From Octopus bimaculoides (Eukaryota): a DNA stretch of 64,000 bases. This document shows positions 6,351 through 51,801 of the stretch, one piece after another. The notes under the pieces were generated by a model. The model was not told the DNA's origin, searched no databases, and worked only from the letters and a program-made list of their open reading frames with translations. The stretch's first letter is position 1. Every line of letters starts with the position of its first letter. The position numbers and the translations under genes are program-made. The DNA is taken from positions 148,175,523 through 148,239,522 of the forward strand of contig NC_068982.1 of assembly GCF_001194135.2 (NCBI RefSeq). The letters are read 5' to 3'.

Positions 6351-6375
6351 AGATTAATTATGTAAAAATACTTAC

Positions 6376-6976: not shown

Positions 6977-7017
<41 letters not shown>

Positions 7018-7019
7018 AT

Positions 7020-8376: not shown

Positions 8377-8419
<43 letters not shown>

Positions 8420-8578: not shown

Positions 8579-8580
8579 AA

Positions 8581-9235: not shown

Positions 9236-9281
9236 CATATATGGACATGTATGTATACATATATATGTATAGCAACAGATG

Positions 9282-9316
<35 letters not shown>

Positions 9317-9371
9317 CACAGTGATATATATATATATATGTATATATGTGTGTATATATATATATATATAT

Positions 9372-9537
9372 AGGCGTAGGAGTGGCTGTGTGGTAAGTAG
9401 CTTGCTTACCAGCCACATGGTCCCGGGTTCAGTCCCACTGCGTAGCAACTTGGGCAAGTGTCTTCTACTATAGCCTCGGGCCGACCAAAGCCTTGTGAGT
9501 GGATTTGGTAGACGGAAACTGAAAGAAGCCCGTCGTA

Positions 9538-9588
<51 letters not shown>

Positions 9589-9897
9589 NNNNNNNNNNNN
9601 NNNNNNNNNNNNNNNNNNNNNNNNNNNNNNNNNNACACACACACACACACAACACAGTGATATATATATATATATGTATGCGTGTTTGTGTGTCTGTGTT
9701 TGTTCCCCCCAACATCGCTTGACAACCGATGCTGGTGTGTTTATGTCCCCGTAACTTAGCGGTTTGGCAAAATAGACCGATAGAATAAGTACTAGGCTTC
9801 CAGAGAATAAGTCCTGTGGTTGATTTGCTCGACTAAAGGTGGAGGTCCAGCATGGCCGCAGTCAAATGGCTGAAACCAGTAAAAGAGTAAAGAGTAT
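9372..9897 (+). mobile_element. Full-length SINE with internal microsatellite/gap
   Basis: Head ggcgtaggagtggctgtgtggtaag, body caacatcgcttgacaaccgatgctgg and tail gtaaaagagtaaagag, shared with 12418-12832, 13366-13820 and 14998-15737. Confidence 0.9.
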
Positions 9898-10837
9898 ATG
9901 TATATATACATACATACATGCATACATTTATACTTTTAATATGCATACATAGGTATATATACATATATATGCCTGCTAATCTTTACAGCCCGTTACATCG
10001 GAGCATTTTTCATCACTTTGTAGCGGTTTGTAGATAAAACATCACACAAATACCTCGTCTGTACATCTAATGCATTGGGACGAATATATTCAGCAGGCAG
10101 CATTCAGCACCCTCACGCATACACTTAGACAAGCTTTGTCATGCACATTTACCTACATTTTGTTTGTAATAAACTCTTTAAACTTCCCATAATATTATCG
10201 GGTAAACCGGACGGTTGCATCAACTTAGGGCATGCATTCTATTTTAGGTTGATTATTTCTTTCACATAAGCTATGACATGCTGAAATTTACGTGTGTGGT
10301 ATCAAATTGTTTGTTTCAATCGTTACTTAACATTCGTTAAATATTATCACTAATACTACCAATATCGATTTTTAAAATTGAAAAAATTTCTAGTGACCCA
10401 AACAAAAATAGAAATAATATATTATATATTATATTGGCGTTATTACAGAGTCAAACAGCACTATCATCTGAAGCAGATAATATACACCCAGAAAAATAAA
10501 GAAATAAATTTTGATCAAGCTATTCTTTATTAGGGCACTTATATACTGAATACCATTAGTTATTTTTAATGTCCTCATATTTTCAGTACACAAAGTGTCA
10601 TGATTGCCAATGATTTAAATATATGATAAATTGATAAATATTAGAAAAGATTTCGGTTAGTAATTGATAAATAGGAATGAGTTAACTTAAAACTTCAAAA
10701 ATAAACATCTACATATTTGAAAAACTGACTCACAAAATAGAAGTGTGTTATCTTTTTTTTTTAATTTTTTTTTTTTTTTTTTTTGACCAAGTAACAAATT
10801 TCTATATTTATTTTTCCCTAATTTAACGTGAATGGAA

Positions 10838-11060
10838 GGCAGTGAGCTGGTGGAATGGTTTTCACCCCGGGCAAAATGCTTAGTGGCATTTTCGTCCGGG
10901 TTTACATTCTGAGTTCAAATTCCGCTGAGATTCACTTTGCCTTTCATTCTTTCGGGGTCAATAAAATAAGTACCGGTTGAGCCCTGGGATCGATGTAATC
11001 AACTTAAACCTCCTCCGAAATTGTTACCCTTGTGGCGAATTTTTGAAATCAATGTTTTAA
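10838..11060 (+). mobile_element. Second SINE family (ggcggtgagctggcagaa head), central box resembling the MetaSINE domain
   Basis: tRNA-like head plus tttgcctttcattctttcggggtcaataaaataagtacc. Other copies lie near 12900, 24525, 24750, 25065(-), 35080(-), 37470, 37915 and 63865. The Meta assignment is from memory. Confidence 0.8.
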
Positions 11061-11877
11061 AGTGAAAGGAATAATTTTATGGGAATTAGCATTCCTTATT
11101 TCTAATACTATGATTTAAGTAAATCTAAATACCAAGTATTGAACAAGGCAACAAGTTAATAAAAGTACCAAAACATCACAACATTTAGTAATATTTCAGT
11201 AAATCGTTATATGTAACTTTTCTGCCCATTTTAACAGAAGTCGTTAAATACGGATATTGCATTCTTATGGTGTATTTCGTGATTGCATTTGATTTGTAAT
11301 GTGTTTTATGGGAGACTGTGTATTGTGAGTGCCACTTTTGTATTTTGTTGGGATCAGTTTGTGAAATAAATTAAAATACACGCACTGGATGTAATTCACT
11401 TTTTACAGCTTTTTACAAATTTGTTAGAAAATTTTCGTTATAAGACTGTGGTCTTAGTAATAACATATAAACCCACCAATATTTTACTTTTATTTTGTTT
11501 TTTTTTTATGTTATGTAGCTTGTGCTTGTGTTTCTTGGTGTAATATCGCGTTCCTCTTATGTGTTTTTAATTTTCTATGTTTGTATACATATGTTTTTTC
11601 ATTTGCTTTTATTTTTTCTAGTGCAGAAATAAGTAAACAAATGAAACATGTGAAATATTTATGGGCGCAATGTAAACAAAAGAGTAACAAGACAGCATAT
11701 AACACGCTGATACCTGTTTATAAACGAATGAAAGATATACAATTGGACATTGAGGATATATAAGTATGACGACATATATGTATGAAGTTGCTACACTAAA
11801 TAGGAACTTGAGTTTATACACTGTACACAGATTAATGCTTGTATGGAGGAATACATAGGAGGATAAAATTTACTTAC

Positions 11878-11938
11878 CTTGCGAAAATGCTTGTATGTAC
11901 ACTATACAAAAACTGCTTAAAAGCAGAAAATACCTCAT
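11878..11938 (-). CDS. Gene 1 signal-peptide exon: MRYFLLLSSFCIVYIQAFSQ(G/V)
   Basis: Acceptor aattatttcag|GAAAAAC ATG, donor CAA G|gtaagt. 61 coding nt with a hydrophobic core; 54/61 nt identical to 38350-38410. Confidence 0.9.
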
Positions 11939-24185: not shown

Positions 24186-24193
24186 TTAGCAAC
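24186..24193 (-). CDS. Gene 2 terminal coding exon: (G)C-stop, then 3' UTR
   Basis: Strong acceptor tttcttttcttttatctctctag|GT TGC TAA; paralogous to 47580-47590, and the downstream UTR is alignable. Confidence 0.8.
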
Positions 24194-25728
24194 CTAGAGA
24201 GATAAAAGAAAAGAAATAAAACATACTATTAATAATTGACAGTGAAATAGAGACTTCGGTTCAAACAATCAAATGTATGGCATGAAATGAATTAAATCAC
24301 ATATTAATGTAAAATATTCTTTTTTTTATTTTTGTAAAATGAAAATAAAACAAAAACTTATCTATAGTTCTATCAAGAACAGAAATGCGTGAGTAAGAAT
24401 CTTAACAAAGTCAAGCATAACATTAACACGTCATTAGTAATTTGTGAGTTATGCTCGGATAAGATAGCAATGAAAACTTCTCACTAACTATGTATCATCA
24501 TTATGTTAATATTTCATCTTCGCAAGGCGTCGCCTTGGCAGAATCGTTAGCACGTCGGGCGAAATGCTTAGCGGTATTTCGTTCTGAGTTCAAATTCCGC
24601 CGAGGTCGACTTTGCCTTTCATCCTTTCGGGGTCGATAAATTAAGTACCAGTTACGCACTGAGGTCGATGTAATCGACTTAATTCCGTTGCCTGCCCTTT
24701 ATTGTCCCCTCTATGTTTAGCCCCTTGTGGGTAATAAAGAGACAAGAATCGTTAGTACGCCGAGTAAAATGCTTAGCGGTGTTTTGTCCATTTTAAAGAT
24801 CTGAGTTCAAATTCTGCCAGAGTCAACTTTGCCTCCTTTTTTTTCCAGCTCAGTAAAACAAGTATGATTTGAGTATTGGAGTTGATGTAAGCGACTCACT
24901 CGCGTCCCCGAAAATTTCTGGCTTTGAACCAAAATTCGAAACCAACATTTCCTCTAGATTTGGGATCATCATGCAAACAAATCCAAATACTCGAATTATT
25001 GAAAATGTAAGTATTAGTGAAGTACTTCATTCATCATAATACTGAATATTTTTTTCTAGTCTAGGCACAAGGCTCGAAATTTTGGGGGAGGGGGCCAGTC
25101 GATTAGTACGACTCCAGTACGCAACTGGTACTTAATTTATCGACCACGAAAGATTTAACGGCAAAGTCGACCTCAGAGCAATTTTAACTCACAACGTTAA
25201 GACAGCCGTGCAACGTAAAGACAGTCGTACCAACGTTTCTACCAACTCACTACCTTCATAATACTGAATATTGATAAGGGACAGAAATTGATAAGCAGTT
25301 GTTAATTATTCAAAATATAGGTATGGATGATTCTACATTATATTTAAAAAGATTTGTTGGTTTAAAAAAAAAATGGATTTGCTTTTCCTTCGTCAGTATG
25401 CTTCAGATTAAACAGACAACAGTATATAAAGTTACCATGTTTGCAATTATCACAAAGACGTCTTTTTTTTTAATGCCTTATGACCATAAAATATTTTAGT
25501 GGTGAAGAGCATTATCTTAATGCATTTTCATTGAATATTGAATGACAGGCATATAGGTACTTGCAAAATGAAATTAATAAGGGAACGAGGTTAATGTAAG
25601 TGATTTCCAGTCTTTAATATCCTATCCAAAATCAGAGCACTTTAAATCGAAGAAAGGCTCATCTAACATCCTTGCTGTTAGAAACAAATTACAAACATAA
25701 TGCGCTAAAGTAATCCATTTCGTCATAT

Positions 25729-26626
25729 ATGTATTTTGATCAATAAGTATCCGGACTGTTGCTATAGTAACAAGGCTAAAGCACAGAGAGTAAAGCTGCT
25801 TAGCAAAAATTGACCGTGAACTCTGCTGTACATGCGCACTAAGTTTTAACGTTTTAGTTCACTTCTGCTGTTTACAGAAGTGCTTGGAAACAAAGTGTGT
25901 ACCATGTGATCGTCGCATTGAGCATGACAGAGAAAGTTGAGCAAAGAATTTACATCAAATTTTGTCAAAATCTTGGCGATACCTGTTCAGAGGCCTACAC
26001 AAAGTTTTCAAAACGTTCTCATCGTTCTACACACAATCAAGAAGATATTGCGCAACTGAAACCCGAATGTGCTTTTGTTCAACTGAAAGCAGTTTTGGCA
26101 CAAACTTGGCAGACACGCATCTCATACCCAAATCTTCAGGGATAATGGACTGGACTGAACCATAACTAATCTGCACATCCTCTGATAACTCACGGATGGT
26201 GATTCGACGATTTTCCCTCACAGCTACACACAGTTCTGCGATGTTTTTCTCAGTTGTGCTGGTTGCTGGTCTCCCAGGACGTTCGTTAATAACGATATTT
26301 TTTCGGCCATCTTGGAAATGTCTGAACCACTCGTACACTTGTGTGCTACTTATTCACTCCCCTTCATACACTTTCTGCAACCTTGCGTAAGCCTCTGAGC
26401 ATGTATCGGCATGACAACTTTCCCTGTCATGGTCAATGTGACGATCAAATGCTACACACCTTCCTTCCAAGCACTGCTTCAAACAGTGGAAGTGAGCTAG
26501 AACGTTAAGACTTAGTGTGCGTGCACAGCAGAGTTCAAGTTCAATCTGTGCCAAGTGGGTTTACTCTGCGTACTTTAGCTTTGTTACTATGTCAACAGTC
26601 CAGATACTTATTGATCAGACCTTGTA
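25729..26626. mobile_element. Palindromic mariner derivative made of two inverted 5' halves
   Basis: TIR tgatcaataagtatccggactg / cagtccagatacttattgatca. Transposase N-terminus on + (MTEKVEQRIYIKFC) and on - (YEWFRHFQDGRK...RITIRELSE). Confidence 0.8.
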
Positions 26627-26877
26627 TGTGTAAAACATAAAATTTTTGATGCACTGATAAATTCTCAGATAAATTAAACGGTCAATTTGTTTATACGAAT
26701 TAAAGATATAAATAAATAAACAATATAATTTATTTTTCAGCGTGTGCCGGGAATACTTTAAGAAACCATTAAACAGTTTGCTCAACCTTAACGTAAGAGA
26801 CATTCAGTTGCTTGCATTTTACAAATAATGACGTTATAATGATTATATTTTCTTTATTATTTCTTGTCTATATATCT

Positions 26878-27192
26878 ATGGTGGAGGCGCAATGGCCCAG
26901 TGGTTAGGGCAGCGGACTCGCGGTCATAGGATCGCGGTTTCGATTCTCAGACCGGGCGTTGTGAGTGTTTATTGAGCGAAAACACTTAACGCTCCACGAG
27001 GTTCTGGCAGGGGATGGTGGCGAACCCTGCTGTACTCTTCCACCACAACTTTCTCTCACACTTTCTTCTTGTTTCTGTTGTACCTGTATTTCAAAGGGCC
27101 AGCCTTATCACTGTGTCACGCTGAATATCCCCGAGAAGTACGTTAAGTGTACACGTGTCTGTGGAGTGCTCAGCCACTTTCACGTTAATTTC
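26878..27192 (+). mobile_element. tRNA-derived SINE running into an assembly gap
   Basis: ggaggcgcaatggcccagtggttagggcagcggactcgcgg...ggtttcgattc head. Confidence 0.75.
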
Positions 27193-27918
27193 NNNNNNNN
27201 NNNNNNNNNNNNNNNNNNNNNNNNNNNNNNNNNNNNNNNNNNNNNNNNNNNNNNNNNNNNNNNNNNNNNNNNNNNNNNNNNNNNNNNNNNNNNNNNNNNN
27301 NNNNNNNNNNNNNNNNNNNNNNNNNNNNNNNNNNNNNNNNNNNNNNNNNNNNNNNNNNNNNNNNNNNNNNNNNNNNNNNNNNNNNNNNNNNNNNNNNNNN
27401 NNNNNNNNNNNNNNNNNNNNNNNNNNNNNNNNNNNNNNNNNNNNNNNNNNNNNNNNNNNNNNNNNNNNNNNNNNNNNNNNNNNNNNNNNNNNNNNNNNNN
27501 NNNNNNNNNNNNNNNNNNNNNNNNNNNNNNNNNNNNNNNNNNNNNNNNNNNNNNNNNNNNNNNNNNNNNNNNNNNNNNNNNNNNNNNNNNNNNNNNNNNN
27601 NNNNNNNNNNNNNNNNNNNNNNNNNNNNNNNNNNNNNNNNNNNNNNNNNNNNNNNNNNNNNNNNNNNNNNNNNNNNNNNNNNNNNNNNNNNNNNNNNNNN
27701 NNNNNNNNNNNNNNNNNNNNNNNNNNNNNNNNNNNNNNNNNNNNNNNNNNNNNNNNNNNNNNNNNNNNNNNNNNNNNNNNNNNNNNNNNNNNNNNNNNNN
27801 NNNNNNNNNNNNNNNNNNNNNNNNNNNNNNNNNNNNNNNNNNNNNNNNNNNNNNNNNNNNNNNNNNNNNNNNNNNNNNNNNNNNNNNNNNNNNNNNNNNN
27901 NNNNNNNNNNNNNNNNNN
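27193..27918. other. Assembly gap inside the last intron of gene 2
   Basis: Run of N; it could hide a further module exon. Confidence 0.95.
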
Positions 27919-28155
27919 GTCTTTATAAGAATTTATCAAGTAGCTAGCGTGAAAAAACCTCATAAGGGAAAAATCCATAATTTATTCCCTAAAATAAATT
28001 TATTTATATAAGGGCATTACATGAATGCCCCACGCTAAGAGGGACTCTAGGGTCAAAATACTATAATAAACACATTTATATATATATAACAAGTTTAATG
28101 AATATTGCTTAATTTTCTATTGGCATATCGACTGAGCATATGAATTTAAGCTTAC

Positions 28156-28275
28156 CGGCTGCTTCAGTGTAATGTCCAAATCCTTTCCCCATTCTGTCAC
28201 AAACACTCACAATACATCCATCTTCAGACTTTATTCTCGTTCCAGCTTCCTGACAACTACCGTTTATTCTGCAAC
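28156..28275 (-). CDS. Gene 2 module exon 5: GCRINGSCQEAGTRIKSEDGCIVSVCDRMGKGFGHYTEAA(G)
   Basis: ttttttcacttcaag|GT TGC ... GCC G|gtaagc; 120 bp, phase 1-1, 4 Cys. Confidence 0.9.
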
Positions 28276-29187
28276 CTTGAAGTGAAAAAACAAATTTGTT
28301 TCGTTGCATCAGTACCTGTATCTATGAAATGTATATTCAATTATTTCGACTAAATCACATTGTGTATTGTCAGTGTATTAAAACTATAAAATATTAACTA
28401 AACCTTCAAATATCAATCGTAGCATAAAACTTACATGTCGTATCGAAAGTAAGTTTGTTTTAATATATCGTTTCCTTACACATAATGAAAGTAAAAGTAA
28501 TACATTGACTTACAACTGTTTATAATATTGCATGAATAATTTGATTGAGCATTTTATTCAAAAGTTAGATTTTCTTATATATTTTAAATAGAAGTATCTC
28601 ATCAGGGCGCTTTATATGTTAGTACCATGTCATAGCAGTACTCTATTTGACAATGTGCACTATCACTTGAAATATAATGTAGGATATGTATTTTTAAAAA
28701 CATATTTTAATCTTGTTGTGAAAAGAATTCAAACTGAGCCATAGAGCCGAATTGTTACTAGTCACTGCCCTTTCTTTGTTGTATCGTTATTTAGCAGAAT
28801 TAGCATTTAAGAATGACCATTATAAATTGTGTTCATAATTTCTAACTGATCAAAATCAGATATCCTCAAAATAAATCAGATTATTGTAGGAGATTTTAGT
28901 ATATGAATCTGGCTATTTCTATTTTAGCGGAGACGTATTTGTTACCCCGAGAAAGTTTTTACGTATTATGTATTTTGAATGGTTAAGGCAAAGTACGATA
29001 GTTATGCCAAATTAAATTCTAAACGTTTTATAATTATTGAGTGAAATATATATCACGAAATAACATTCCGTTTTCAATATGAAATTGATTTTTGTTGGTG
29101 TATAACCTGTAATATTTTGTAGTTCATAAAATACATACCTGAGTATCTTATATAAGGGACATTTTATAAAAAGATTTACAAACTTAC

Positions 29188-29307
29188 CAGTGCGGTTAGT
29201 GTAAACTTGATATCCATTGTGGTCCATTTTACAAATTCTTACAGCACAAAGATTTTCTGAATATACTTTCTCTCCAACCTTCCGACAAGCACCGTCTATT
29301 AAACAAC
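29188..29307 (-). CDS. Gene 2 module exon 4: GCLIDGACRKVGEKVYSENLCAVRICKMDHNGYQVYTNRT(G)
   Basis: tttttttacatcaag|GT TGT ... ACT G|gtaagt; 120 bp, phase 1-1, 4 Cys. Confidence 0.9.
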
Positions 29308-30889
29308 CTTGATGTAAAAAAACAAATAGTTTTCTTTTATTTCAAGAAATGTGGATTGCCTCTTGTCAATATATTTATACCTAAGCAATATTAACAACTC
29401 TTCCAAAAACGAGTATTCCTTAAAGATTTTGTCACATTTCAAATATAATGCGTTAGTCAATAAAGTCATTCTACTAATTGTGATACTAAATATGCAAGGC
29501 ATTTTGCTAATGTTTAATGAAGGCAGAGGCAAAAGGATTTATTTATAGCTAATTAGAGATTGTTACATGATTAATTAAATAAACTATGGTATTCAAAATC
29601 AATTTTCTAATATACATCTTTGCTGAAAACGTCATATCAGAATTCTTTATGCGTTTGCAATGCGTCATAGTGTAATATAATTTGGAATATATTATATGAT
29701 ATACATTTTCAGATACCTATTTTAGTTTCCAAGTGAAAAGAAAATCAAGAAATTGCAGTATACAATTTTGTTTCACATTTTATCTCTCCCTAGTCAGAAG
29801 ATATGGTATCAATATGACTAATTTTAATGATTACTCAGTGGTTACTTAATGAGTACTTTATAATTGCTTAAAACTTACCTAAAAATGAAAACACATAATG
29901 AGTTCATAGGAATATTTATAAAATGTGCAGAAACAAGTCTTAAACCTAGCTGCTGAGTCAAATTTCAAACGCTGGCAACGTGTAATGATTCGTTTATTCC
30001 TAAGACAGTACACAGTGTTGGCGGGTAGATTGAATTATAATGTGTGATACACTTTTTTTGTTAAATATACAATGATATACCCGTTCAGGCAATCAAACAA
30101 ATCTGATCGATCAGATTAATTTCTACTACAGTCTCTTAGATCGAAACCCCCTACTCTCCAATCGAAACTCAAGATGTAAGAACAATTCTATGTGAATCTC
30201 GATCTTGAACAATGCAGATTATCATAAAATTAATTACAATATTACACTCGAAATTAATTCAAAGAAATGATTTAGATAGAAGATTCAGATTAAGCATCTT
30301 ATAGTAATTACTATCGTCACTTTGCGCTTAAACTTCAAATCGAGCTGGAACTATTGTGATTACCCTGACAAACAAGTCTACAATATATTTATCAATGATC
30401 CAAGTTTTGATTCCGTCGTTTATAAATTGTCTCTTGAAAAAAATAAATTCGATGATTATCACATTTCTATTGTCTAAAATATTTGATGTCTTTCACATTT
30501 CCATTTGCCAAAATATATTCTTCTGAAATAGTGTTTTTCCAAACTTCTGACAAAAATAATATAATAGTGTTGTTGTTAATTAAAACTAAAGATACACTGA
30601 GGTTTAAAGAATGATTAGTAGTGATCATGACACGCGCTTTTTATTTTCATCCATTCAACGATCCCCTTCACCGATTTATTAATAGAGAAGACAATACATA
30701 CAATATTACAACATTCAATTTGTGCATTTCAACCTCAATACATGCGTATTGTTATTATAACAAAATTATTCAAGGAAAGCGTTTTTGAAATTAATAGATA
30801 TTGTTAAGACATTTATACTTGTTATTTTAATTTAAATATTGAATGCAGTTGAACATTTTCAACAACAAGTATCAATATCTGAAACTTAC

Positions 30890-31012
30890 CGTCAAGTTTT
30901 CCTCGCCATCCAATATACGATGGATACATATGTGTGCAAAGTATAGAATAACAAGGGTCCCTTGTTTGTATTTTCGTGCCAACACTGTGACATATACGAT
31001 TTAGTAAACAAC
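30890..31012 (-). CDS. Gene 2 module exon 3: GCLLNRICHSVGTKIQTRDPCYSILCTHMYPSYIGWRGKLD(G)
   Basis: ttcttgtttgtag|GT TGT ... GAC G|gtaagt; 123 bp, phase 1-1, 4 Cys. Confidence 0.9.
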
Positions 31013-33034
31013 CTACAAACAAGAAAATAATTACGATAAATGTAGGAGAAACTTCTCAGTTATGTCAAGGTATTGTCTCCATAAGAAGACTAAGATATTT
31101 ACTCAGGTATGCACAGAGCAAAATTTCAGTGATGTTTACTTCATACATACATACATACATACATACATACATGTGTGTATGAGTGTGTATTAATGACCTA
31201 TGACATTGCTAACTGGATGGCTTCTCATAAATTATCCCAGGTATCGAAACTATAATGATGTTAAATAAAGTATAGGAATAAATATATCCCGAGTCTAGTT
31301 TTCTGGCTTATTACATATATTACAGCAATTATAATCTTATTTCATGTCAAACTATATAGAAAAATACAATCAGTTTGATAATTCCAGTACAATTTAATCA
31401 TTTGAAATAAATGTTGTTTCATTATATGGTCAAATTCATTGAAAAAAACGTGAAAATTTGATATAAACCACCCTAATGGTTATACATCTAATCATAATGT
31501 AATGCAATTTACAGTATTTAATTGCAGACGTTTCTCCAAGAAAATGTCTTTAAAAAATCAATCTGTGTCCTGCGTGCGAATTTGTGCCCATATTACATGA
31601 TTTAATTAACTAAAAGCATTTTTCCTGAATATGCACTGCTGAAATTGAGGTGCGACTAATATTCCTGAGCGTCTTTTACGCCATCAAATCTCTAAGAAAA
31701 CGAAAATCCTTGATAATTGTCAAAATATTCCTATTTCAAGATATAGAGAAGTTTTGCGATATTTGCAAAGCACATCAAATCTGTGTACAAATAAAGCAAT
31801 TAAACTACATTATACTTATTTCTATTATATTTGCCCAATATTCGAGTGGCTTTTTCAAAAAGTTTGCTACCTTATTGGTACCTCTTAAACTTACGTTATG
31901 TTAGCTTATGATATTTTAACAGAAGACTGGTGACTAATTATTTGCATCGAAGTTCTTCATCAATGTTCCACAATGAAAGAATAGTATAGACATGTATATA
32001 CATAACGCTATCTGTAGCAAAGTATTTCAGCATTAAACAATATTGTACATAAAATATCCTATGTATTATCAGTGAGTTACAATTAAATTATGGCGGAAAT
32101 CACCTGGCTCATAATAGCATTGAGTTATTATCGCCCATGCAAGCTTGGGTATATTGTATCAGTATGTTCTTATTTATGTATCTACACATTTTTTTATAAT
32201 GAAAACGCTTTATCATTCTTCATCAGAATTTATTTCTAAATAAATAATTGTTGAATTTAATCATACGTTTAAATCAGAAAATTCTGTTAGGAATCTAATA
32301 ACATCTGATTAAATTCACCTAAAATAAAAGGATTTTTTATTACTATTTAAGTAAGAGTATTGGAAAAATTCTTCATGGTAATCAATTATTAGTTACGGAT
32401 ATTACTTTCTTATTTTAAAAAAATATCGAAGCCAATTTAACATTTCGTTTCGTCGGAACCGATAAAATACATTATAGTCAAGCACTGAGTTCGTTTTAAT
32501 CAACTCTGCACGTCTTTATCTAGCTTATTGCATCATCTTTCATTTGTCGGAATAAATCACAACAGGAAGAGTAGTACTTAAAACACATTTAATCTAAATA
32601 CAAGAAACTGGCAACGTAAGAAAATTCATATGTATTACATTTCTGATAAATGTTGTGAATGTCAAAAGAAAATATTGAATCCCATACGTTACGTTAATAA
32701 AATAGAAAATAAAGTTTTATTTTAGAGAAGTATCACTATAAATGTATACATTTCACTTACTGCATATTGGTATTGTTGTTTAACTACTGGCAAACACTAA
32801 TCGAACATAATTATGATTAACGATATTGCAGTCCTTCATTTTTTATAAAATTGTAGTGTAGTTTTATTGAGGTATATCTGCCATTTCTACCTGGTTGAGC
32901 GAACGCACTACGTATTTTTGTCCCTAATTAGCTACGTATTTTATTGCTACGACGGTACTGAATAATAGATTTTACTCATATTTAATTATTCAATTATTAA
33001 ATTTTCAATAGAGTAAAAGAATATTTTAACCTAC

Positions 33035-33157
33035 CAGTATATGTCGCTCTCCACACATATCTTCCGTATGGGGTACGCATGCAGGTATGGTACATACATC
33101 TGCCTCTTTCTGTAATTCTCTGTCCTTCTTTATAACAAACACCATCCCGGTAACATC
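33035..33157 (-). CDS. Gene 2 module exon 2: GCYRDGVCYKEGQRITERGRCMYHTCMRTPYGRYVWRATYT(G)
   Basis: cgcaacttctag|GA TGT ... ACT G|gtaggt; 123 bp, phase 1-1, 4 Cys. Confidence 0.9.
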
Positions 33158-33417
33158 CTAGAAGTTGCGAATATACACAATTTGTTATTTTCAAAACTAT
33201 AGGTCAGGAAGAATAGAATTCTTTTCGAAAATAGCCCATATGCAATTCATGCAATTTCATTTACATCTAATTAAGATAGAAATACTTGTCTTGTTTTAAT
33301 GACAATGACCCAGCATAACCACACCAACGCCTTAAAATAAATCAAAGGGAGATTGAAATTCGCATCCATTAGGCAGCGTGTAGGTCGCACTCATCACATG
33401 TGCACAAAACTCCATAC

Positions 33418-33458
<41 letters not shown>

Positions 33459-33720
33459 TTTCATATACGTACATATAGAAATGTTGAGACTGAAAACCAT
33501 CCACTGCTGCAATGTGTAAAAACGAAGGGAAAATCATTTGAAAAAATGTGATATTTAATTTTATCATTAAATCTTAGCCTACTATAAATTGTATAGACCA
33601 ATTTCTAGTTAACTCAAGAAAATGTTCATAACACTACATGCAGTTTACAAAAAAAAAAAAAAGAATCGAGAGAACTTAGTTCAATGTTCCGACTGATTCT
33701 GAGATGCACTACCTCCTACA

Positions 33721-35036
33721 TACAAGATGGAACATAACGATCTCCCACATTTAAAGTGGGCACTGTGCAGGCTGTAATGGCGGTACAAAGGTGTCGGACT
33801 CATTCGGTAGGCTAGGCTCTACAATTTTCATTCTTTTTCATCAATTATTTTAGCAATTTCTCTATCAATGATCATAACCTTTTCCTAATCACTTTCAGAA
33901 GGCATCACGTGTTGAACTGGTGAACATCATGGCTTTGTTGTTCAAGTGTATTTGAAAGCAACCGATCTGTAACAGTGACGCAACGAGCATTCCGCAGACG
34001 ATCGATAAACGATTTTGCTTTGGATTTCTAATCTTCAGGCAAGTGGACCCACACTGAAAAGAAAGTCACCTGGCAGACCCAGGACCGTTAGAACTCCAGA
34101 AAATGTAACAGCATTAAGAGCATCCATTCAACAATCACCAAAGTGTTCCGCTCGTAAGTATAGCATAGCACTAGGGATATCAAGTCGGAGTCTGAGGAGG
34201 ATTCTGCATGCCGGTCTGAAACTGCATTATTACAAAATGATGTTGGTTCAAGAATTAACTGAGGCAGATCATATCAACCACAGAGCCGTATTTGTGAATA
34301 TTCTTGCAAAAGTTCCAACTGTAACTGTTCCTCTGAGTACCGATGTTACTTACTTCCATACCAATGGGATCAACATACTCCTCATGGACTCCACCAACGA
34401 CCGCGTCACTCTCCTTGCGTAACTGTTTGGTGTGCAGTGGCCGACTTTGATGTGATCGGCCTGTGCTTTTTTGAAGGTGGGGAAACAATAACTGTTACTT
34501 CCGGCCGATACATTAAAATGTTGGAGGCTTTTCTGCACCCTAAACTGGGCGATTTGGATAAGAACATGTGTGGTTTCAACAGGACAGGGCCACGGTTCAC
34601 GCAGCCAGACGTTTGTTCGGAGTGTTGAAGGAAATGCTTCCTGGTCGTTTTATCTCTTTAAGTGGGTACGTGGGGTTGCCGGCAAGTCCACCAGATTTAA
34701 GCCTTTGTGAGTTTTCCATTTGGGGATACCTAAAGGAAAAGGCTTTCTGACATCGTCCTCGTACTCTTAAAGATTCGAAGGAAAGAGTCAGAGGAAATCG
34801 ACGTATTTCAACCTGAGATGAGGCGGAGATTCATGCAGAACTTCTGTGAACGACTCCATTAATATATTGCCAACAAAGGCTGCTATTTGTTTAGTATAAT
34901 TTTTAAACCCCTCTAAAACAAAACTATATTTTATTTGCTTTTAGAACTATAACCAGCTTTCTTCTGAATAGTTGTGTTCTTTTTTTTTATATATATTTCC
35001 ATTCAAAATGTGGGATATATTTATGTCCACCCTGTA
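33721..35036 (+). mobile_element. Near full-length decayed maT/DD37D-like transposon in an intron of gene 2
   Basis: Ends tacaagatggaacata...cccacatt / aatgtggga...tatgtccaccctgta. Motifs PGRPRTVRTPENV, WFQQDRATVH and SPPDLSLCEFSIWGYLK, with frameshifts. Confidence 0.85.
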
Positions 35037-35380
35037 TAGCACGTTATTTAAATAATGAATATTGCTTTCAAATGTTGGCACGAAGCCAGCAGTTTTGGTG
35101 GAGGATTAAGTCGATTCCATCGACTCCAATGTTTAAGAGGTGCTTATCTTATCGACGCAGTCGACATCAGCGCAAGTTGAACTCAAAACGTTCAGACGGA
35201 CGAGACGCCGCTAAGAATTTTCCCCTAGTATAATAACGATTCTACCAGCTTACAAGCTTACATCTAAAGGATGACTATTGCTTGTAATATTTATTTTCTT
35301 GATATATTAATGTATTGTTGCAAGTTCTGGCATGCGTTTTATAATATAGTTTTTGGAAGATAAAGTCCGTACAAACCTAC

Positions 35381-35500
35381 CGGTTACTTTATGTCGCACG
35401 TAACATCCATGTCCTCTTCTTTCAGAAATATAAGTCATACAGAATGGAGTTGCTTCTACTTTTCTTCCATATTTCACACAAACGCCACGTATCAAGCAAC
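35381..35500 (-). CDS. Gene 2 module exon 1 (type A): GCLIRGVCVKYGRKVEATPFCMTYISERRGHGCYVRHKVT(G)
   Basis: tctttcaactcatag|GT TGC ... ACC G|gtaggt; 120 bp; counterpart of 845-964. Confidence 0.9.
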
Positions 35501-35582
35501 CTATGAGTTGAAAGAAAATTAATACATTTTGTTTATATCAGAAACTCTTTATGAAATACATCATTATATTTAAAACACTACA

Positions 35583-35725
35583 AATGGTTGAAGCTTTTCA
35601 TGTGATGCAAACTTACTAAGTTTAAAGTTGATATTGAAACAAGAATCATCACTGAAGGTGACACTCATCTTTCTACATATGGTTATTGATATTAACTCAT
35701 TTAATATAAATTAACAATGAGTATA

Positions 35726-35770
<45 letters not shown>

Positions 35771-35865
35771 AGTAGAAAGATGACCGTCACCTTCAGTCAC
35801 AATTCTTCTTTCAATACCAGCTTTAAACTTAGTAAGTTTGTGTCACATGAAAAGCTTCAACCATT
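35583..35865. repeat. Inverted repeat (about 94-bp arms) around a (TA)n core
   Basis: aatggttgaagcttttcatgtg...catctttctac is mirrored by gtagaaagatg...cacatgaaaagcttcaaccatt. Confidence 0.85.
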
Positions 35866-36354
35866 TCTCAGGCCTACATGGTTGAGTGTTAAATTATATT
35901 TACTCCACACACACACACACACACACACCTTCGCTCATGTGTGAGCCAGTTATATATTTACTTGTATGTGTGTGTGTGTGCGTGTATAATTACACACACA
36001 CACACACATTTATCATTGTATTTTGTACGTCTGTATAGTATACAATAGTACATTATCCATTCAAAAATAATAATTACACAAATGTTCATATGTTCCAAAC
36101 AGCACAGACGAAGTCGAAGTATAAAAGTTTCGAACAGCACCTAGCACTTTCTTCAATATAATATCACAAATTGTTAATCTCTAATTTTGCTAGGTCTCAT
36201 TATCTGTTCATTTACATTTAATCATACAATCGTTGATGCTGTCATGGTTTATAGGGTATAGATTATAGATATAATTTCTTCCAGAGTAAAAGAGAGCCAA
36301 ATATGTAGCAAAATAAAGAAATATGATGAAGACTAAATATGTTAAAATATTTAC

Positions 36355-36417
36355 CTTCCTCTAAGATATAATATTTCGATCCAAGAGGTATTTTCTGCTG
36401 ACACGGTTTTGTTATCC
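36355..36417 (-). CDS. Gene 2 short one-Cys exon (type B): (G)ITKPCQQKIPLGSKYYILEE(G)
   Basis: tacatttttgcag|GG ATA ... GAA G|gtaaat; 63 bp, phase 1-1; paralog of 6376-6435. Confidence 0.85.
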
Positions 36418-38349: not shown

Positions 38350-38410
38350 CTTGCGAAGTTGCTTGTTTGTACGTTATACAAAAACTGATTAAAAGCAGAA
38401 AATATCTCAT
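38350..38410 (-). CDS. Gene 2 signal-peptide exon: MRYFLLLISFCITYKQATSQ(G)
   Basis: aattgtttcag|GAAAAAT ATG ... CAA G|gtgagt; 61 coding nt. Confidence 0.9.
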
Positions 38411-47579: not shown

Positions 47580-47590
47580 TTAAGAACAAC
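47580..47590 (-). CDS. Gene 3 terminal coding exon: (G)CS-stop
   Basis: tttcttttctttaactatctag|GT TGT TCT TAA. The 3' UTR (47100-47580) aligns with 23480-24185. Confidence 0.8.
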
Positions 47591-48265
47591 CTAGATAGTT
47601 AAAGAAAAGAAATAAAGCAACTTTTAATAACTGGTTGTAAAATAAAATTTTGCTCAATATAATGAAAGTAAGTAAATCAAATATTGAATTAAAATTGAAG
47701 TAAAATCAAAATTAAAACGAAAATGCATTTATAGTTCTGTTGAAAAGTATGTGAGTAAACATCTTAATAAACTGCTGAGCAGCATTAACATAGAAGTAAT
47801 TTGTGAATTATGCTTGAATAGGTTATCAAACTTAGTACTGAATGTAATATCACTATGTTCGAATTACATTAAGGTATGTGATCGGCAAAAAGCAGATCTC
47901 CCATCCAAATTATTGAAAACTTAAGTATAAGTCAAAAATCTGATAAATCATAATATTCAATATTGAAAACAGATTGAAACTTTCATGTTAAGTGGCTGTA
48001 GTTTATTCAAAACATCAGTATGGATGATTCTGCATCATATCGATAGAAATCGTTGTTGAACAAAAATAATTTGTCTATCTTTACAATATTTTAGATTAAA
48101 CAACTGACAATAAGCAAAATTACCATCAATGAAATTATCTTAGAGAAAGAGCTTTTTTTTTCATTCGTTTTGGCTATTTACATCAATGGCGTCGGAAAAG
48201 TAATGTTATTTTGATTGCTTACATTAAAAATGCACATACATACGTACGTACACACATGTACGTAC

Positions 48266-48296
<31 letters not shown>

Positions 48297-48362
48297 TGTA
48301 TGTATGTATGTATGCATGTATGTATGTATGTATGTATATATGTATATATATGTATATATATA

Positions 48363-48396
<34 letters not shown>

Positions 48397-48765
48397 NNNN
48401 NNNNNNNNNNNNNNNNNNNNNNNNNNNNNNNNNNNNNNNNNNNNNNNNNNNNNNNNNNNNNNNNNNNNNNNNNNNNNNNNNNNNNNNNNNNNNNNNNNNN
48501 NNNNNNNNNNNNNNNNNNNNNNNNNNNNNNNNNNNNNNNNNNNNNNNNNNNNNNNNNNNNNNNNNNNNNNNNNNNNNNNNNNNNNNNNNNNNNNNNNNNN
48601 NNNNNNNNNNNNNNNNNNNNNNNNNNNNNNNNNNNNNNNNNNNNNNNNNNNNNNNNNNNNNNNNNNNNNNNNNNNNNNNNNNNNNNNNNNNNNNNNNNNN
48701 NNNNNNNNNNNNNNNNNNNNNNNNNNNNNNNNNNNNNNNNNNNNNNNNNNNNNNNNNNNNNNNNN

Positions 48766-48796
<31 letters not shown>

Positions 48797-50689
48797 AAAG
48801 AAAGAAAATCGAGAACAATGAATGTATGAATAATTTATTTGTATATAAAGATGTTGATATTTTTAAAAAACATAACAGTAAAAATAAATTATAACTTGGA
48901 AAGCTAAAAAAATGTGAAAAACCTACATATATGTTTCAGTTCTAAACCCTAGTTGGTATGCAATTCTAAGAATTTGGTTATATGCTAAGAAAGGTATAAT
49001 TGTTTGTCTGTGTGGGGTAGAACTTCTTCAAGGTCATGTGCTTATCCGTGGATCTAACTTCTTCGAATTGACTGTATATATATATAATATGTGTGTGTGC
49101 GAGAAAGAGAGAGAACAAAATATATATGCATATATAATGAAATAAACTACTAGCTGCAATTTGAGAATAATAAATATTACTTAATATTGCATTAATGGAT
49201 CAAAACAGTTTGATGCAAATTCATTTGTACTCCGAATTTCAAACGTCGTGCTAATCTTAAGTCATTGAGAATTCCCAACGGCTACAGATTAGCATCACTC
49301 GGAGTACCAACGAATTTGAATCAAACTGTTTTGATTCGTACATATAACTTCCAGTAAATGTGTCGAGTACCCTTCTTTCGGTTGTCCAGTCACTCTATAA
49401 TATTGAATTAAGTAATTTAAAGGTCTCGAACAGTATGTACTTCCTTTATTAAATAAAACACTTGAAAATTCCGGTGCTCACCCTTATATTTAGTTTCGAG
49501 GATAGCCCCAAACCGTATTTTTCGACAATATAAATCAAAACAATTGAATCGCTTTCTTGTTCCAACGGGTAAACACTGATCATTTATTGGACAACCTGCC
49601 AGAATAAAAAAAGTAGTTTATTTTTAAATCAGTTATTGCTTCTGTGAAATATAAAGTTTTATTTTCGTTTTCTTAGATATATACATTATGCATTCGTAAA
49701 CAATTAAATAATAATCGATAGTTGATTGATTGATTTCTTCACTCATGCATTACATCACATAGAGAGAAAGTTTGAAGAGTAAAAGAGAGGTGCAGAGAAA
49801 GTTACAGTAAGAGGTGCAGAATGAGTGCTTAGATGGAGGAATAAGACATGAGTGCTAAATACACAGTGAGAGAGAAAAGTTCATACAGACAGCAGTAGGA
49901 AATAAGTAAATGACAAAGTAGTTATGGAAAATACATGCATGCATGTGTGAAACGAAATACGTCAGTTACTGCATACTACAGACCAACAGTTTAAAATAAT
50001 TTAAATTATGGTACGCATACATATACATGAAGTGTATATACTTTAGTAAACAAGTACTTAGGAAAAATAATTTAGAATTTATTCCATAGTTCATATCCAA
50101 AATGTAAATGAACAATCAAATGCAAAATTATTCACTGTGTTCATTTTATATAATGAAAATTTACCCACACAGTATATATATATATATGTATATATACTAA
50201 CACACATACAGGATTTAAATTCGATAATCTGACAAACTTGTATAGCATGCTGTGTATTGCCAAGCAATCTTTCAGGTTCAAACATGCAACATGGTTGGTC
50301 TTTTTTGAAAAAAAGTAAAGGAAGCCAGTTTGTTGGAAAACACGAAAATGTACCTTAGTCTTTCAGAAAAATTTTGTAGTTCTGTAGAGTTCTTAGATCT
50401 AAAAAGTATGAGATTTTTCGGCTAAACAAAACCTGCATTTCTTTGATTCATTAACCTATGGCGAGGATCGTTCCATGATGCTCCACTTGATTGTATGTGG
50501 TGTACAGTTAGCCTTCAGATCCCAGATATTGCTAACTTCGTGGCTATAGTATTATTCACGATCGAAAAGAAGGCAAGTAGTTAGTGTATCTTTTGCTAAA
50601 ATTTGTTCTGCCAATGCACTTTTTTCTGTTGAGTTTCCGTATTCTGGAACGCTACTGTCACTTCAGCTTCATAAAACACTGAAATAATC

Positions 50690-51080
50690 GTGCATGTTTG
50701 GCCGAGTGCGCGAGGAACTGAGTTTCGACAGCTACAACTAGGAGTGGACGCTTGGTATGACCTCTGAGTGATAATATTTTTCTTATTGGTTTATCAGCTG
50801 TATGTCCATTACAAATTTTGCTATTAACTGGAAATGCTTATCTATTAAGGCAAGAGATTTTCTACCTACGTCAGTCTTAACATTCAGAGGAAATGGGAAC
50901 CAACCATATAATCTTTTTGGTTTTGTAATTTTAATCATATGGTTGTAAGTTATCTTTTCTTTCAAGTCACTGTTAACCAGGGTGTGACTATAATAGGGTG
51001 CTTCCTTATCGATTGTTTCCTTAGAAGAGGAGAGTTTAGATATATTATTGTTGATATTGACTGTAAGGTTTTTGAACACT
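50690..51080 (-). mobile_element. Penelope-like element fragment
   Basis: KPKRLYGWFPFPLNVKTDVGRKSLALIDKHF resembles the WFNPP...V.TN.G..FL.L.DKHF motif. Confidence 0.65.

Positions 51081-51739: not shown

Positions 51740-51801
<62 letters not shown>

What the first reader, a model, noticed from the sequence alone, without database searches (positions are those of the whole stretch)
24186..36417. Frame-neutral and cysteine-neutral cassette architecture with an offset module boundary
Every internal exon is phase 1-1 and a multiple of 3, and every module exon starts by completing a Gly-Cys. The terminal exon encodes only GC-stop (gene 2) or GCS-stop (gene 3). Keeping a whole exon for one Cys suggests that the folded unit is Cys2-Cys3-Cys4 of one exon plus the leading Cys of the next. 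Any skipping, duplication or shuffling of 4-Cys exons would then keep both frame and Cys parity, giving a possible combinatorial system. Alternative splicing is not shown by the sequence.
Basis: partly seen in the sequence, partly recalled or inferred. Interest (0 to 1): 0.75.

Follow-up and report, generated by a model that had tools for sequence, protein, structure and literature searches.

The report
Octopus secreted finger-module genes, one exon each
This is a tandem cluster of Octopus bimaculoides genes for small secreted proteins built from fibronectin-type-I-like "finger" modules, one frame-neutral exon per module; that layout is the textbook one for shuffled extracellular modules, but here each module appears to be disulfide-linked to the next, and sister-species annotations show isoforms that drop whole modules.

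Summary
The exon pattern is real. All genes are on the minus strand. Gene 2 has a signal-peptide exon ending in phase 1, a 63-nt exon and five module exons of 120-123 nt. All are phase 1-1 and each module starts G|GN-TGY (Gly-Cys). It ends in an 8-nt terminal exon, GT-TGC-TAA. Gene 3 has seven such exons and ends GCS-stop.

The assembly gap lies in the last intron. In two other octopus species the matching 577-580 bp holds a sixth module exon, so gene 2 as read is probably one module short.

The window is Octopus bimaculoides. The 41-residue, 4-Cys module has no Pfam or PDB sequence match. AlphaFold2 gives a confident five-strand finger (pLDDT 90-91) whose best structural matches are tandem fibronectin type I modules. 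Relatives occur across molluscs.

Cysteine presence/absence patterns and predicted strand geometry suggest C1-C4 pairs within a module and C3 pairs with C2 of the next. The exon-2 Cys and the terminal Cys then cap the chain. This is inferred, not shown.

O. sinensis RefSeq isoforms differ by exactly one or two whole modules.

Verdict: ordinary class 1-1 module architecture, with an unusual inter-module disulfide variant. Interest is moderate.

The parts
38350..38410 (-). Gene 2 signal-peptide coding exon (MRYFLLLISFCITYKQATSQ + first base of a Gly codon). The donor is in phase 1.
   Evidence: Identical to the signal peptide of O. sinensis XP_036354653.1 (P0001).
36355..36417 (-). Gene 2 exon 2: 63 nt, phase 1-1, (G)ITKPCQQKIPLGSKYYILEE(G). 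It is an N-terminal half-module with one Cys exactly 16 residues before C1 of module 1.
   Evidence: In the AF2 model of the gene-3 orthologue, the paralogous peptide folds as a beta-hairpin that runs into strand A of module 1.
35381..35500 (-). Gene 2 module 1 exon (120 nt): GCLIRGVCVKYGRKVEATPFCMTYISERRGHGCYVRHKVT. C4 is replaced by Ser and a new Cys sits 7 residues downstream.
33035..33157 (-). Gene 2 module 2 exon (123 nt): GCYRDGVCYKEGQRITERGRCMYHTCMRTPYGRYVWRATYT. This module is absent from O. sinensis isoform X3.
   Evidence: 95.9% nt identity to O. vulgaris, pN 0.021 and pS 0.122.
30890..31012 (-). Gene 2 module 3 exon (123 nt).
29188..29307 (-). Gene 2 module 4 exon (120 nt).
28156..28275 (-). 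Gene 2 module 5 exon (120 nt).
26881..28078 (.). Stretch with no counterpart in other octopuses: 160 bp unique (27919-28078), the assembly gap (27193-27918, N) and 312 bp of a SINE-like repeat (26881-27192). It takes the place of the 577-580 bp that carry the module 6 exon in O. vulgaris and in a third species.
   Evidence: The module 6 protein has no tblastn hit anywhere in the window.
24186..24193 (-). Gene 2 terminal coding exon, GT TGC TAA: completes the split codon, then Cys, then stop.
   Evidence: Orthologous to L001 28120. Its surroundings are paralogous to the gene-3-type terminal exon (window 24223-24048 matches L001 6-184).
47580..63732 (-). Gene 3 (its signal-peptide exon and exon 2 lie beyond the window end). 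Seven module exons at 63732-63613, 62145-62026, 61819-61700, 58217-58095, 57831-57712, 52452-52336 and 49595-49482, plus terminal exon 47590-47580 (G-C-S-stop).
   Evidence: It matches O. bimaculoides A0A0L8HLW9 (P0031), which skips the intact exon 57831. Module exons were duplicated together with their intron flanks.
845..11938 (-). Start of gene 1 (LOC106869870): signal-peptide exon about 11938-11878, exon 2 about 6435-6376, module 1 exon 964-845. The rest lies beyond the window start.
   Evidence: Identical to XP_014771277.1 (P0004), which identifies the window as O. bimaculoides.

Best explanation
The window holds part of a tandem cluster of at least three paralogous Octopus bimaculoides genes. 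They encode small secreted proteins of about 200-280 residues.

Each protein is built as follows:
- a signal peptide;
- a 20-residue half-module (exon 2);
- four to seven 38-41-residue modules with four cysteines, consensus GC-x2-NG-x-C-Y-x2-G-x2-V-x5-C-x4-C-x5-G-x-Y-x-W;
- one final cysteine.

Each module is one exon flanked by phase-1 introns that split a glycine codon. This is the classic class 1-1 arrangement of shuffled extracellular modules.

Each module is predicted to fold, within its own exon, as a five-strand finger: an A-B hairpin over a C-D-E sheet. This resembles a fibronectin type I module or the first subdomain of a VWC domain.

Inferred, not shown:
- C1 (strand A) bonds to C4 (strand D) inside the module, as Cys1-Cys3 do in FN1.
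- C3, at the base of the D-E hairpin, bonds to C2 on the outer face of the next module's A-B hairpin. The fingers are thereby stapled into a chain.
- The exon-2 cysteine supplies the partner for C2 of the first module.
- The cysteine of the tiny terminal exon supplies the partner for C3 of the last module, like Cys4 of a closed FN1 module.

Every internal exon carries one acceptor (C2) and one donor (C3) of this chain. Duplicating, deleting or skipping an exon therefore keeps the frame, the cysteine count and the connectivity.

The family has grown by exon and gene duplication. In sister species it is annotated with isoforms that differ by whole modules.

The biochemical role is unknown. By analogy with FN1 arrays, the most likely role is extracellular binding of extended peptide or matrix ligands.
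For: Gene structure and phases.

Species and coding reality:
- Exact matches to O. bimaculoides proteins P0004 and P0031.
- Exons are more conserved than introns, with pN/pS 0.42.

Fold:
- AF2 of three modules gives pLDDT 90.1, and of a four-module isoform 91.3. Both are all-beta, with strands A-E inside each exon.
- Best Foldseek matches are tandem FN1 modules: 9a3y_B FNI7-9 (E 1.4e-3, prob 1.00), 9a3x_B, 2cku, 3ejh, 2rkz, 3cal. VWC-containing NEL also appears.
- PF23003 Fn1_2 is the commonest Pfam hit among relatives (14 of 60 windows, best E 1.8e-6), followed by SVWC and VWC.

Family:
- An exhaustive profile search finds multi-module relatives only in molluscs: scallop, limpet, mussel, Lymnaea, Plakobranchus.

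Inter-module disulfide:
- Among 198 module hits nearly all have all four Cys.
- The first module of 10 of about 13 arrays lacks C2.
- The only three internal modules that lack C2 (P0006 ~233, P0009 294, P0008 213) each follow a module that lacks C3.
- Array-terminal modules carry an FN1-like CxC...C cap.
- The NG two-residue turn puts C1 on the same face as the conserved core Tyr and C2 on the opposite face. C3 lies opposite the Gly that precedes the next C1 (strand registers).
- In the model, the exon-2 Cys sits at the base of its hairpin next to module 1, and the terminal Cys lies two residues beyond the residue opposite the last C3.

Cassette behaviour:
- Isoforms X2 and X4 differ by exactly 40 and 80 residues, which are whole modules.
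- Isoform X3 of the gene-2 orthologue lacks module 2.
- The four-module isoform folds with pLDDT 91 across the non-native junction.
- Exon duplications in gene 3 include 76-78% similar intron flanks.

Class 1-1 rule: PMC8001218.
Against: - I could not read model coordinates, so no disulfide was seen directly. The pairing rests on Cys presence/absence patterns and on strand registers.
- Two VWA-containing relatives (P0005, P0013) start with a module that lacks C1 but keeps C2. This needs a re-pairing under my scheme and fits a C2-C4 scheme better.
- The exon-2 Cys has the linear spacing of a C4, not a C3.
- Foldseek E-values are weak (1.4e-3 or worse), and no octopus protein reaches any Pfam threshold.
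- Cys counts are odd in P0001 (23) and P0031 (27).
- The isoforms are computational gene models. The O. bimaculoides and O. vulgaris models also differ in which modules they include, which could reflect annotation noise.
- No expression or binding data were found.
Confidence: 0.65

Rival explanations
1. The structural unit is offset from the exon: C2, C3 and C4 of one exon plus C1 of the next form a closed four-Cys domain. The pairing would be FN1-like 1-3/2-4 (C2-C4 and C3-C1') or C2-C3 and C4-C1'.
For: - The terminal exon supplies a Cys at exactly the C1 position, and exon 2 supplies a Cys at exactly the C4 spacing (16 residues before C1) in all three genes.
- The first modules of P0005 and P0013 lack C1 but keep C2, C3 and C4, as this scheme predicts.
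- C2...C3-x4-C4...C1' loosely recalls the FN1 pattern C...CxC...C.
Against: - Strands A and B, which carry C1 and C2, form one NG-turn hairpin inside one exon, and all five strands of a finger lie in one exon.
- C2 points away from its own module's core.
- C4 lies opposite a residue six positions before C1', about 20 A away in the predicted hairpin.
- C3 and C1' fall on opposite faces of the sheet.
- Ten first-of-array modules keep C1 and lose C2, which is the reverse of what this scheme predicts.
- The co-loss of C3(i) and C2(i+1) would leave two unpaired Cys in different modules under C2-C3/C4-C1'.
Confidence: 0.15
2. All four Cys of a module pair inside that module. The lone N-terminal and C-terminal Cys are free or form intermolecular bonds, so the proteins dimerise or polymerise head-to-tail.
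For: - FN1 modules have only internal disulfides.
- One extra Cys at each end is what a cross-linking subunit would carry.
- Odd Cys counts occur in some products.
Against: - First-of-array modules with only C1, C3 and C4 would each have a free Cys.
- The C3(i)/C2(i+1) co-losses would leave two modules with unpaired Cys.
- C2 faces away from its own module's sheet.
Confidence: 0.12
3. The cassette layout is only a fossil of exon duplication. Each gene makes one fixed mRNA, and the module-number differences among database proteins are gene-model errors or species differences in exon content, not regulated alternative splicing.
For: - Class 1-1 exons are expected for any shuffled extracellular module, whether or not they are skipped.
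- The isoforms are Gnomon predictions.
- The O. vulgaris model P0002 for gene 2 is plainly wrong: wrong frame plus a poly-Lys/Glu tail.
- The O. bimaculoides model P0031 skips an intact exon that the sister-species models include.
Against: - Two isoforms of one O. sinensis gene differ by exactly one and two whole modules and are otherwise 100% identical.
- The skipped module 2 of the gene-2 orthologue is intact, has consensus splice sites and is under purifying selection, so it is used in some transcripts.
- NCBI normally issues X-isoforms only when transcript alignments support them (my own knowledge, not checked here).
Confidence: 0.3

Closest known systems
Fibronectin type I (finger) modules of fibronectin, tPA and factor XII (Pfam PF00039)
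   Same: - About 40 residues with four Cys and a predicted two-strand plus three-strand beta finger.
- A conserved aromatic motif, C-x3-G-x2-Y-x2-G-x2-W, seen in its pure form in the first module of each mollusc array.
- Tandem arrays, one exon per module, and phase 1-1 introns.
- The best Foldseek matches are tandem FN1 modules.
   Different: - The Cys positions differ: C-x5-C-x12-C-x4-C here, against C-x26-30-C-x-C-x10-C in FN1.
- There is no Cys in strand E.
- There is no PF00039 match.
- One disulfide is inferred to link neighbouring modules, whereas FN1 modules are closed.
- The host is a mollusc. Classical FN1 domains are described in chordate proteins (PMC4422808, and my own knowledge).
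Pfam PF23003 Fn1_2 ('MIG-18-like fibronectin type I domain')
   Same: - It is the Pfam family most often hit by the mollusc relatives: 14 of 60 three-module windows, best E 1.8e-6.
- UniRef names Mytilus members 'Abnormal cell migration protein 18-like fibronectin type I domain-containing protein'.
   Different: - The octopus proteins do not match it at all.
- In the whole-protein scans that reported scores, the hits in relatives were below the 27-bit gathering score.
- The model has 70 positions, about 1.7 of these modules.
VWC / SVWC (chordin-like cysteine-rich) domains
   Same: - The N-terminal subdomain of VWC is FN1-like (my own knowledge).
- There are weak SVWC and VWC hits in relatives.
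- VWC-rich NEL is a Foldseek hit.
   Different: These modules have no CxxCxC or CCxxC motifs and only four Cys, where VWC has ten and SVWC eight.
Class 1-1 symmetrical exon modules and whole-module cassette splicing (Patthy's exon-shuffling rule; EDA/EDB exons of fibronectin, FN3 repeats of tenascin-C)
   Same: - The exon equals the module.
- Both flanking introns are in phase 1 and sit in a Gly codon, and lengths are multiples of 3.
- A phase-1 intron follows the signal peptide.
- Whole modules can be skipped without a frameshift (the examples are from my own knowledge).
   Different: - Those classic modules are self-contained. Here the cassettes appear to be covalently chained, and a separate one-Cys exon closes the chain.
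- Splicing here is known only from gene models.

Membership tests
Class 1-1 exon-shuffled extracellular modules | Each module is encoded by one exon flanked by introns of the same phase (1-1), with a length that is a multiple of 3. | tested here: met
   All 13 module exons in the window are 114-123 nt and phase 1-1. The AF2 strands A-E of each finger lie inside one exon.
Class 1-1 exon-shuffled extracellular modules | A phase-1 intron lies at the boundary between the signal peptide and the mature protein. | tested here: met
   The gene 2 signal-peptide exon ends CAA G|gt at 38350. Gene 1 is the same.
Fibronectin type I domain (PF00039) | A profile match to the family model. | tested here: not met
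   There is no fn1 hit for the octopus proteins or for 60 three-module windows of relatives, at E up to 10 and 1 respectively.
Fibronectin type I domain (PF00039) | Four Cys spaced C...CxC...C, with 1-3 and 2-4 disulfides inside the module. | tested here: not met
   The spacing is C-x5-C-x12-C-x4-C. Only array-terminal cap modules of relatives show CxC...C. The disulfides themselves are not testable here.
Fibronectin type I domain (PF00039) | A finger fold: an A-B hairpin packed on a C-D-E sheet. | tested here: met
   This is met at prediction level only. AF2 pLDDT is 90-91 with that strand order. Foldseek probability is 0.77-1.00 to FN1 pairs and triplets, with weak E-values.
Pfam PF23003 Fn1_2 | A profile match at or above the 27-bit gathering score. 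| tested here: not met
   The octopus proteins give no hit. Whole relatives score 15.8-20.9 bits. Some three-module windows reach E 1.8e-6, so the wider family is probably related, but the octopus genes cannot be filed here.
VWC / SVWC | Eight to ten Cys, including the C2-xx-C3-x-C4 and CCxxC motifs. | tested here: not met
   These motifs are absent from all modules. There are only weak hits in relatives.
Mollusc tandem 4-Cys finger-module family (unnamed; defined here by profile A2) | Several consecutive matches to the 41-position module profile, with C1, C2, C3, C4 and the Gly after C2 conserved. | tested here: met
   P0001 scores 254.9 bits with 5 stretches, P0003 176.8 and P0004 116.4. Scallop, limpet, mussel and snail proteins score E 2e-15 to 1e-6 with 4-23 stretches. 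The Cys columns are 100% conserved in the alignments.

The most novel reading that the evidence does not exclude
Molluscs possess an undescribed family of chain-linked finger modules. Each exon-encoded FN1-like module is disulfide-stapled to the next, so exons act as interchangeable links. In octopus this has become a tandem gene cluster whose products are diversified by exon duplication and regulated cassette skipping. The result would be a combinatorial repertoire of secreted binding proteins, for example for recognition of microbes, mates or prey cues.
Probability: 0.15. Interest if true: 0.65.

Novelty: new variant of a known kind. Interest (0 to 1): 0.4.

Why it matters
- **An uncharacterised family placed in a known fold class.** These octopus and mollusc proteins are labelled 'uncharacterized', 'prestalk protein' or 'collagen alpha-5(VI)'. 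This work places them in the FN1/VWC finger fold class. That extends finger-type modules with class 1-1 exons well outside chordates.
- **A testable structural claim.** If the inter-module disulfide is real, each exon would be a fold unit but not a closed covalent unit, and a dedicated one-codon exon would cap the chain. I know of no described module family like this. It would explain why a gene keeps an 8-nt coding exon.
- **A tractable splicing case.** The isoform evidence offers a small case of whole-module cassette splicing in a cephalopod.
- **An assembly correction.** The O. bimaculoides assembly probably hides one exon of this gene in a gap.

Tried and rejected
- Pfam and PDB sequence searches of the octopus proteins found nothing useful.
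I re-ran it with A2.
- Locus look-ups for P0001 and P0032 failed because they are not on record. I therefore could not count module exons in the O. vulgaris or O. sinensis gene-3 orthologue, or see the O. sinensis gene-2 locus.
- I looked for module 6 elsewhere in the window by tblastn and found none.
- Sensitive blastn of the 160 bp next to the gap against both reference loci gave no match.
- ARAGORN found no tRNA in the SINE-like repeat.
- Literature searches for the locus names, for octopus cysteine-rich tandem families and for mollusc FN1-like repeats found nothing on this family.
- Pairing schemes rejected: both bonds internal (C1-C3/C2-C4 or C1-C4/C2-C3); C4(i)-C2(i+1); C2-C3 with C4-C1'. 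They conflict with the Cys presence/absence patterns or with the predicted strand geometry.
- The alternative terminal acceptor ag|GATGTTAG at 25670 is conserved in O. vulgaris and also gives Cys-stop. I judged it less likely than 24193, which has the stronger pyrimidine tract and is paralogous to the gene-3 terminal exon.

Full report
**What the window is.**
The sequence is AT-rich eukaryotic DNA with microsatellites, SINE-like repeats and twelve assembly gaps. All the exons of interest lie on the minus strand. A signal-peptide exon (about 11938-11878), a second exon (about 6435-6376) and a module exon (964-845) translate exactly to XP_014771277.1 of Octopus bimaculoides (P0004). Gene 3's exons translate to O. 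bimaculoides A0A0L8HLW9 (P0031). The window is therefore O. bimaculoides.

**Checking the observation.**
I scanned for acceptor|G-N-T-G-Y exons in phase 1 and read the sequence directly.

Gene 2 is laid out as follows:
- signal-peptide CDS 38410-38350 (donor in phase 1);
- exon 2 at 36417-36355 (63 nt);
- module exons 35500-35381, 33157-33035, 31012-30890, 29307-29188 and 28275-28156 (120 or 123 nt);
- terminal exon 24193-24186, reading GT TGC TAA.

Gene 3 has seven module exons between 63732 and 49482 (114-123 nt). Its terminal exon at 47590-47580 reads GT TGT TCT TAA.

Every module exon begins by completing Gly and then encodes Cys. Every one ends with the first base (G) of the next Gly codon.

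The exons are real coding sequence. Against gapless O. vulgaris DNA (L001) they are 90-97% identical, while the long colinear intron blocks are 85-89% identical. Overall pN/pS is 0.42.

**The gap.**
The run of N at 27193-27918 lies in the intron between module 5 and the terminal exon, so it interrupts no visible reading frame.

The orthologous O. vulgaris gene has six module exons. The sixth (L001 25227-25340, GCILNNKCYPPGWQHQESSCISFKCQSSYKEYYWEKII) starts 436 bp after module 5.

Colinear homology between window and L001 stops at window 28079 (L001 24865) and resumes at window 26880 (L001 25443). A contig from a third octopus species (L002, SRR11869391) breaks at the same two points and also carries module 6 in between.

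In the window those 577-580 bp are replaced by three things: 160 bp of unmatched sequence, the gap, and 312 bp of a SINE-like repeat. A copy of that repeat sits elsewhere in the O. vulgaris gene (L001 15804-16009).

Module 6 has no match anywhere else in the window. It is therefore most probably hidden in the gap, although loss in O. bimaculoides cannot be excluded.

In O. vulgaris and O. sinensis that exon ends in C|gt, so the protein ends Arg-Cys-stop (P0001). The frame is kept either way.

**What the module is.**
The octopus proteins hit nothing in Pfam or among PDB sequences. I ran an exhaustive profile search with 17 modules (alignment A2) against 1.84 billion representative proteins. It found 24 hits:
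- the octopus paralogues and orthologues;
- multi-module proteins from a scallop (VWA domain plus 23 or more modules), limpets, mussels, Lymnaea and a sea slug;
- a few spurious low-complexity hits.

Several relatives give sub-threshold hits to PF23003 Fn1_2, and UniRef names the Mytilus members 'MIG-18-like fibronectin type I domain-containing'. Of 60 three-module windows, 14 hit Fn1_2 (best E 1.8e-6), 6 hit SVWC and 2 hit VWC.

AlphaFold2 on three modules of the gene-2 orthologue used a 60-row alignment of sliding windows in which all Cys columns align perfectly. It gave mean pLDDT 90.1. Each module forms:
- a short A-B hairpin around an N-G turn;
- a short strand C;
- a long D-E hairpin that runs into strand A of the next module.

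Foldseek's most probable PDB matches are tandem fibronectin type I modules: FNI7-9, FNI2-3, 8-9FnI and 2F1-3F1. Probabilities are 0.77-1.00, but E-values are only 1.4e-3 or weaker. A second, independent model gives FN1 pairs (probability 0.96-0.97) and VWC-rich NEL.

So the module is a finger of the FN1/VWC type. It is not a member of PF00039 by sequence or by Cys pattern.

**Where the disulfides go (inferred).**
I could not obtain model coordinates, so this rests on two indirect lines of evidence.

The first is Cys presence and absence across 198 module hits in 18 family proteins (sequences):
- Almost all modules have all four Cys.
- The first module of 10 of about 13 arrays lacks C2 and shows the pure FN1/VWC motif C-x3-G-x2-Y-x2-G-x2-W/F.
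- The only three internal modules that lack C2 each follow a module that lacks C3.
- Arrays in other molluscs end in a cap module, C1-x5-C2-x20-CxC-x11-C, which is an FN1-type closure.

The second is geometry from the strand registers:
- The two-residue NG turn puts C1 on the same face of the A-B hairpin as the conserved core Tyr, and C2 on the opposite face. C2 therefore cannot reach its own module's sheet.
- C3 sits at the base of the D-E hairpin, opposite the Gly that precedes the next module's C1. This places it next to the end of the next module's strand B.
- C4 is about six residues (roughly 20 A) away from that junction.

Together these favour C1-C4 inside a module, as with FN1 Cys1-Cys3, and C3(i)-C2(i+1) between modules.

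In the model of a complete mature protein, the exon-2 peptide forms a seven-pair hairpin. Its Cys lies at the base, beside module 1, where a C3 would be. The terminal Cys lies two residues beyond the residue opposite the last C3.

The exon-2 Cys and the terminal Cys then cap the two ends of the chain. This explains the 1 + 4n + 1 Cys count (18, 22, 26, 26, and 22 for the visible gene 2). It also explains why a coding exon of one Cys is retained.

Points against:
- P0005 and P0013 begin with a module that lacks C1, not C2.
- The exon-2 Cys has the linear spacing of a C4.
- Two products have odd Cys counts (P0001 23, P0031 27).

**Cassette behaviour.**
Gene 3 contains duplicated module exons that share 76-78% identical intron flanks: 61573-61902 with 63487-63816, and 57630-57908 with 61940-62218 and 58063-58318. 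Modules have therefore been copied as exon cassettes.

Database proteins differ by whole modules:
- O. vulgaris P0032 has six modules (A-B-A'-B'-C-D).
- O. sinensis LOC115222431 isoform X2 (P0003) is identical except that it lacks A' (40 residues).
- Isoform X4 (P0033) lacks B and A' (80 residues).
- The O. bimaculoides model P0031 skips the intact exon 57831.
- O. sinensis LOC115232515 isoform X3 (P0001) lacks module 2. Yet that exon is intact in O. vulgaris and O. bimaculoides, 95.9% identical between them, with pN 0.021 against pS 0.122.

The four-module isoform is predicted to fold as confidently as the others (pLDDT 91.3, and 91 across the non-native junction).

These are gene models, not transcripts I could inspect. 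Alternative splicing is therefore supported by annotation but not proven.

**Comparison with what is known.**
The following features are exactly the class 1-1 module architecture that Patthy describes for exon-shuffled extracellular proteins, and that he notes is well suited to exon skipping (PMC8001218):
- symmetrical phase 1-1 exons of 3n length;
- introns inserted in Gly codons of linkers;
- a phase-1 intron after the signal peptide.

Whole-module cassette exons are also familiar from fibronectin and tenascin (my own knowledge). The frame-neutral part of the finding is therefore ordinary.

What is unusual:
- the family itself, which is unnamed and mollusc-wide, with an octopus branch invisible to Pfam;
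- the probable covalent chaining of exon-encoded fingers;
- the one-Cys capping exon.

**Verdict.**
A disulfide very probably crosses exon junctions, and module skipping is annotated. However, the fold unit is the exon, and the architecture is the standard one for shuffled modules. I rate it a new variant of a known kind, with interest 0.4.

Noticed in passing
window 35381-35500 (module 1) and 36355-36417 (exon 2): In O. bimaculoides, module 1 has C4 replaced by Ser and a new Cys 7 residues downstream (…CMTYISERRGHGCYV…). O. vulgaris and O. sinensis keep the canonical C4 (…CMTYVCERRGHGSFV…) but carry an extra Cys in exon 2 (PKCY against SKYY), which gives an odd Cys count of 23. This looks like a compensated shift of a disulfide partner in one lineage and an unpaired Cys in the other.
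   Followed up: partly
window 57712-57831: This is an intact module exon (GCRVNHKCYQSGETVAESECVLLTCTNLSITGYKWKREFT) with consensus splice sites. The O. bimaculoides protein model A0A0L8HLW9 omits it, although its orthologue is included in the O. vulgaris and O. sinensis models. The neighbouring exon 58217-58095 has no counterpart in those models.
   Followed up: partly
window 26881-27192 (+ strand), abutting the gap: A SINE-like repeat runs into the assembly gap. A copy with 83% identity sits at a different place in the O. vulgaris gene (L001 15804-16009), so it is a mobile element with species-specific insertions. ARAGORN finds no intact tRNA in it.
   Followed up: partly
window 26027-26338 (-), 34015-34422 (+), about 62300-63200 (-), about 59000-59900: The introns hold degenerate transposase-like ORFs. 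Their motifs (for example ...GRPxT...ENI...R.N.R.T.RE..) look like mariner/Tc1-type elements. I did not run them against Pfam.
   Followed up: no
window 25663-25670 (-) and L001 26658: A second possible terminal mini-exon, ag|GATGTTAG, would also give Cys-stop. It is conserved between O. bimaculoides and O. vulgaris in the last intron. Its acceptor is weaker than the one at 24193, and the protein sequence cannot tell the two apart.
   Followed up: partly
P0002 (O. vulgaris model for gene 2; L001 10001-68551) and P0001 N-terminus: The O. vulgaris gene model reads exon 2 in the wrong frame, keeps only modules 4-5 and runs into a poly-Lys/Glu tail across 58 kb. The O. sinensis isoform X3 starts with MCVCVCV..., translated from a TG microsatellite in an upstream exon, which is probably 5' UTR. 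Public annotation of this cluster is unreliable.
   Followed up: partly
window 62026-62145: Module B of gene 3 carries a fifth Cys (GCRLNRRCYECGK…). This makes the annotated O. bimaculoides product odd in Cys (27).
   Followed up: no
P0017 (hit, E 1.8e-4): This 776-residue protein has about eight repeats of the form CLIDGVCYKDGAKHPxxxCxxCDxxxSxxxWT, after a proline/lysine-rich low-complexity region and before a beta-propeller-like tail. It shares the C-x3-G-x-C-Y-x2-G start of the mollusc module but has a different second half. Its origin is unknown; it may be convergent or very distantly related.
   Followed up: no
L001 55994-77378 (O. vulgaris, downstream of the gene-2 orthologue): The next gene in the O. 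vulgaris cluster has at least six module exons. After a first, different module (GCMMNGIC…), the rest form a distinct subtype (GCFYSGTCYLPGS…YSWEK…), each followed by an (SL)n-coding microsatellite in the intron. This suggests recent serial exon duplication.
   Followed up: no
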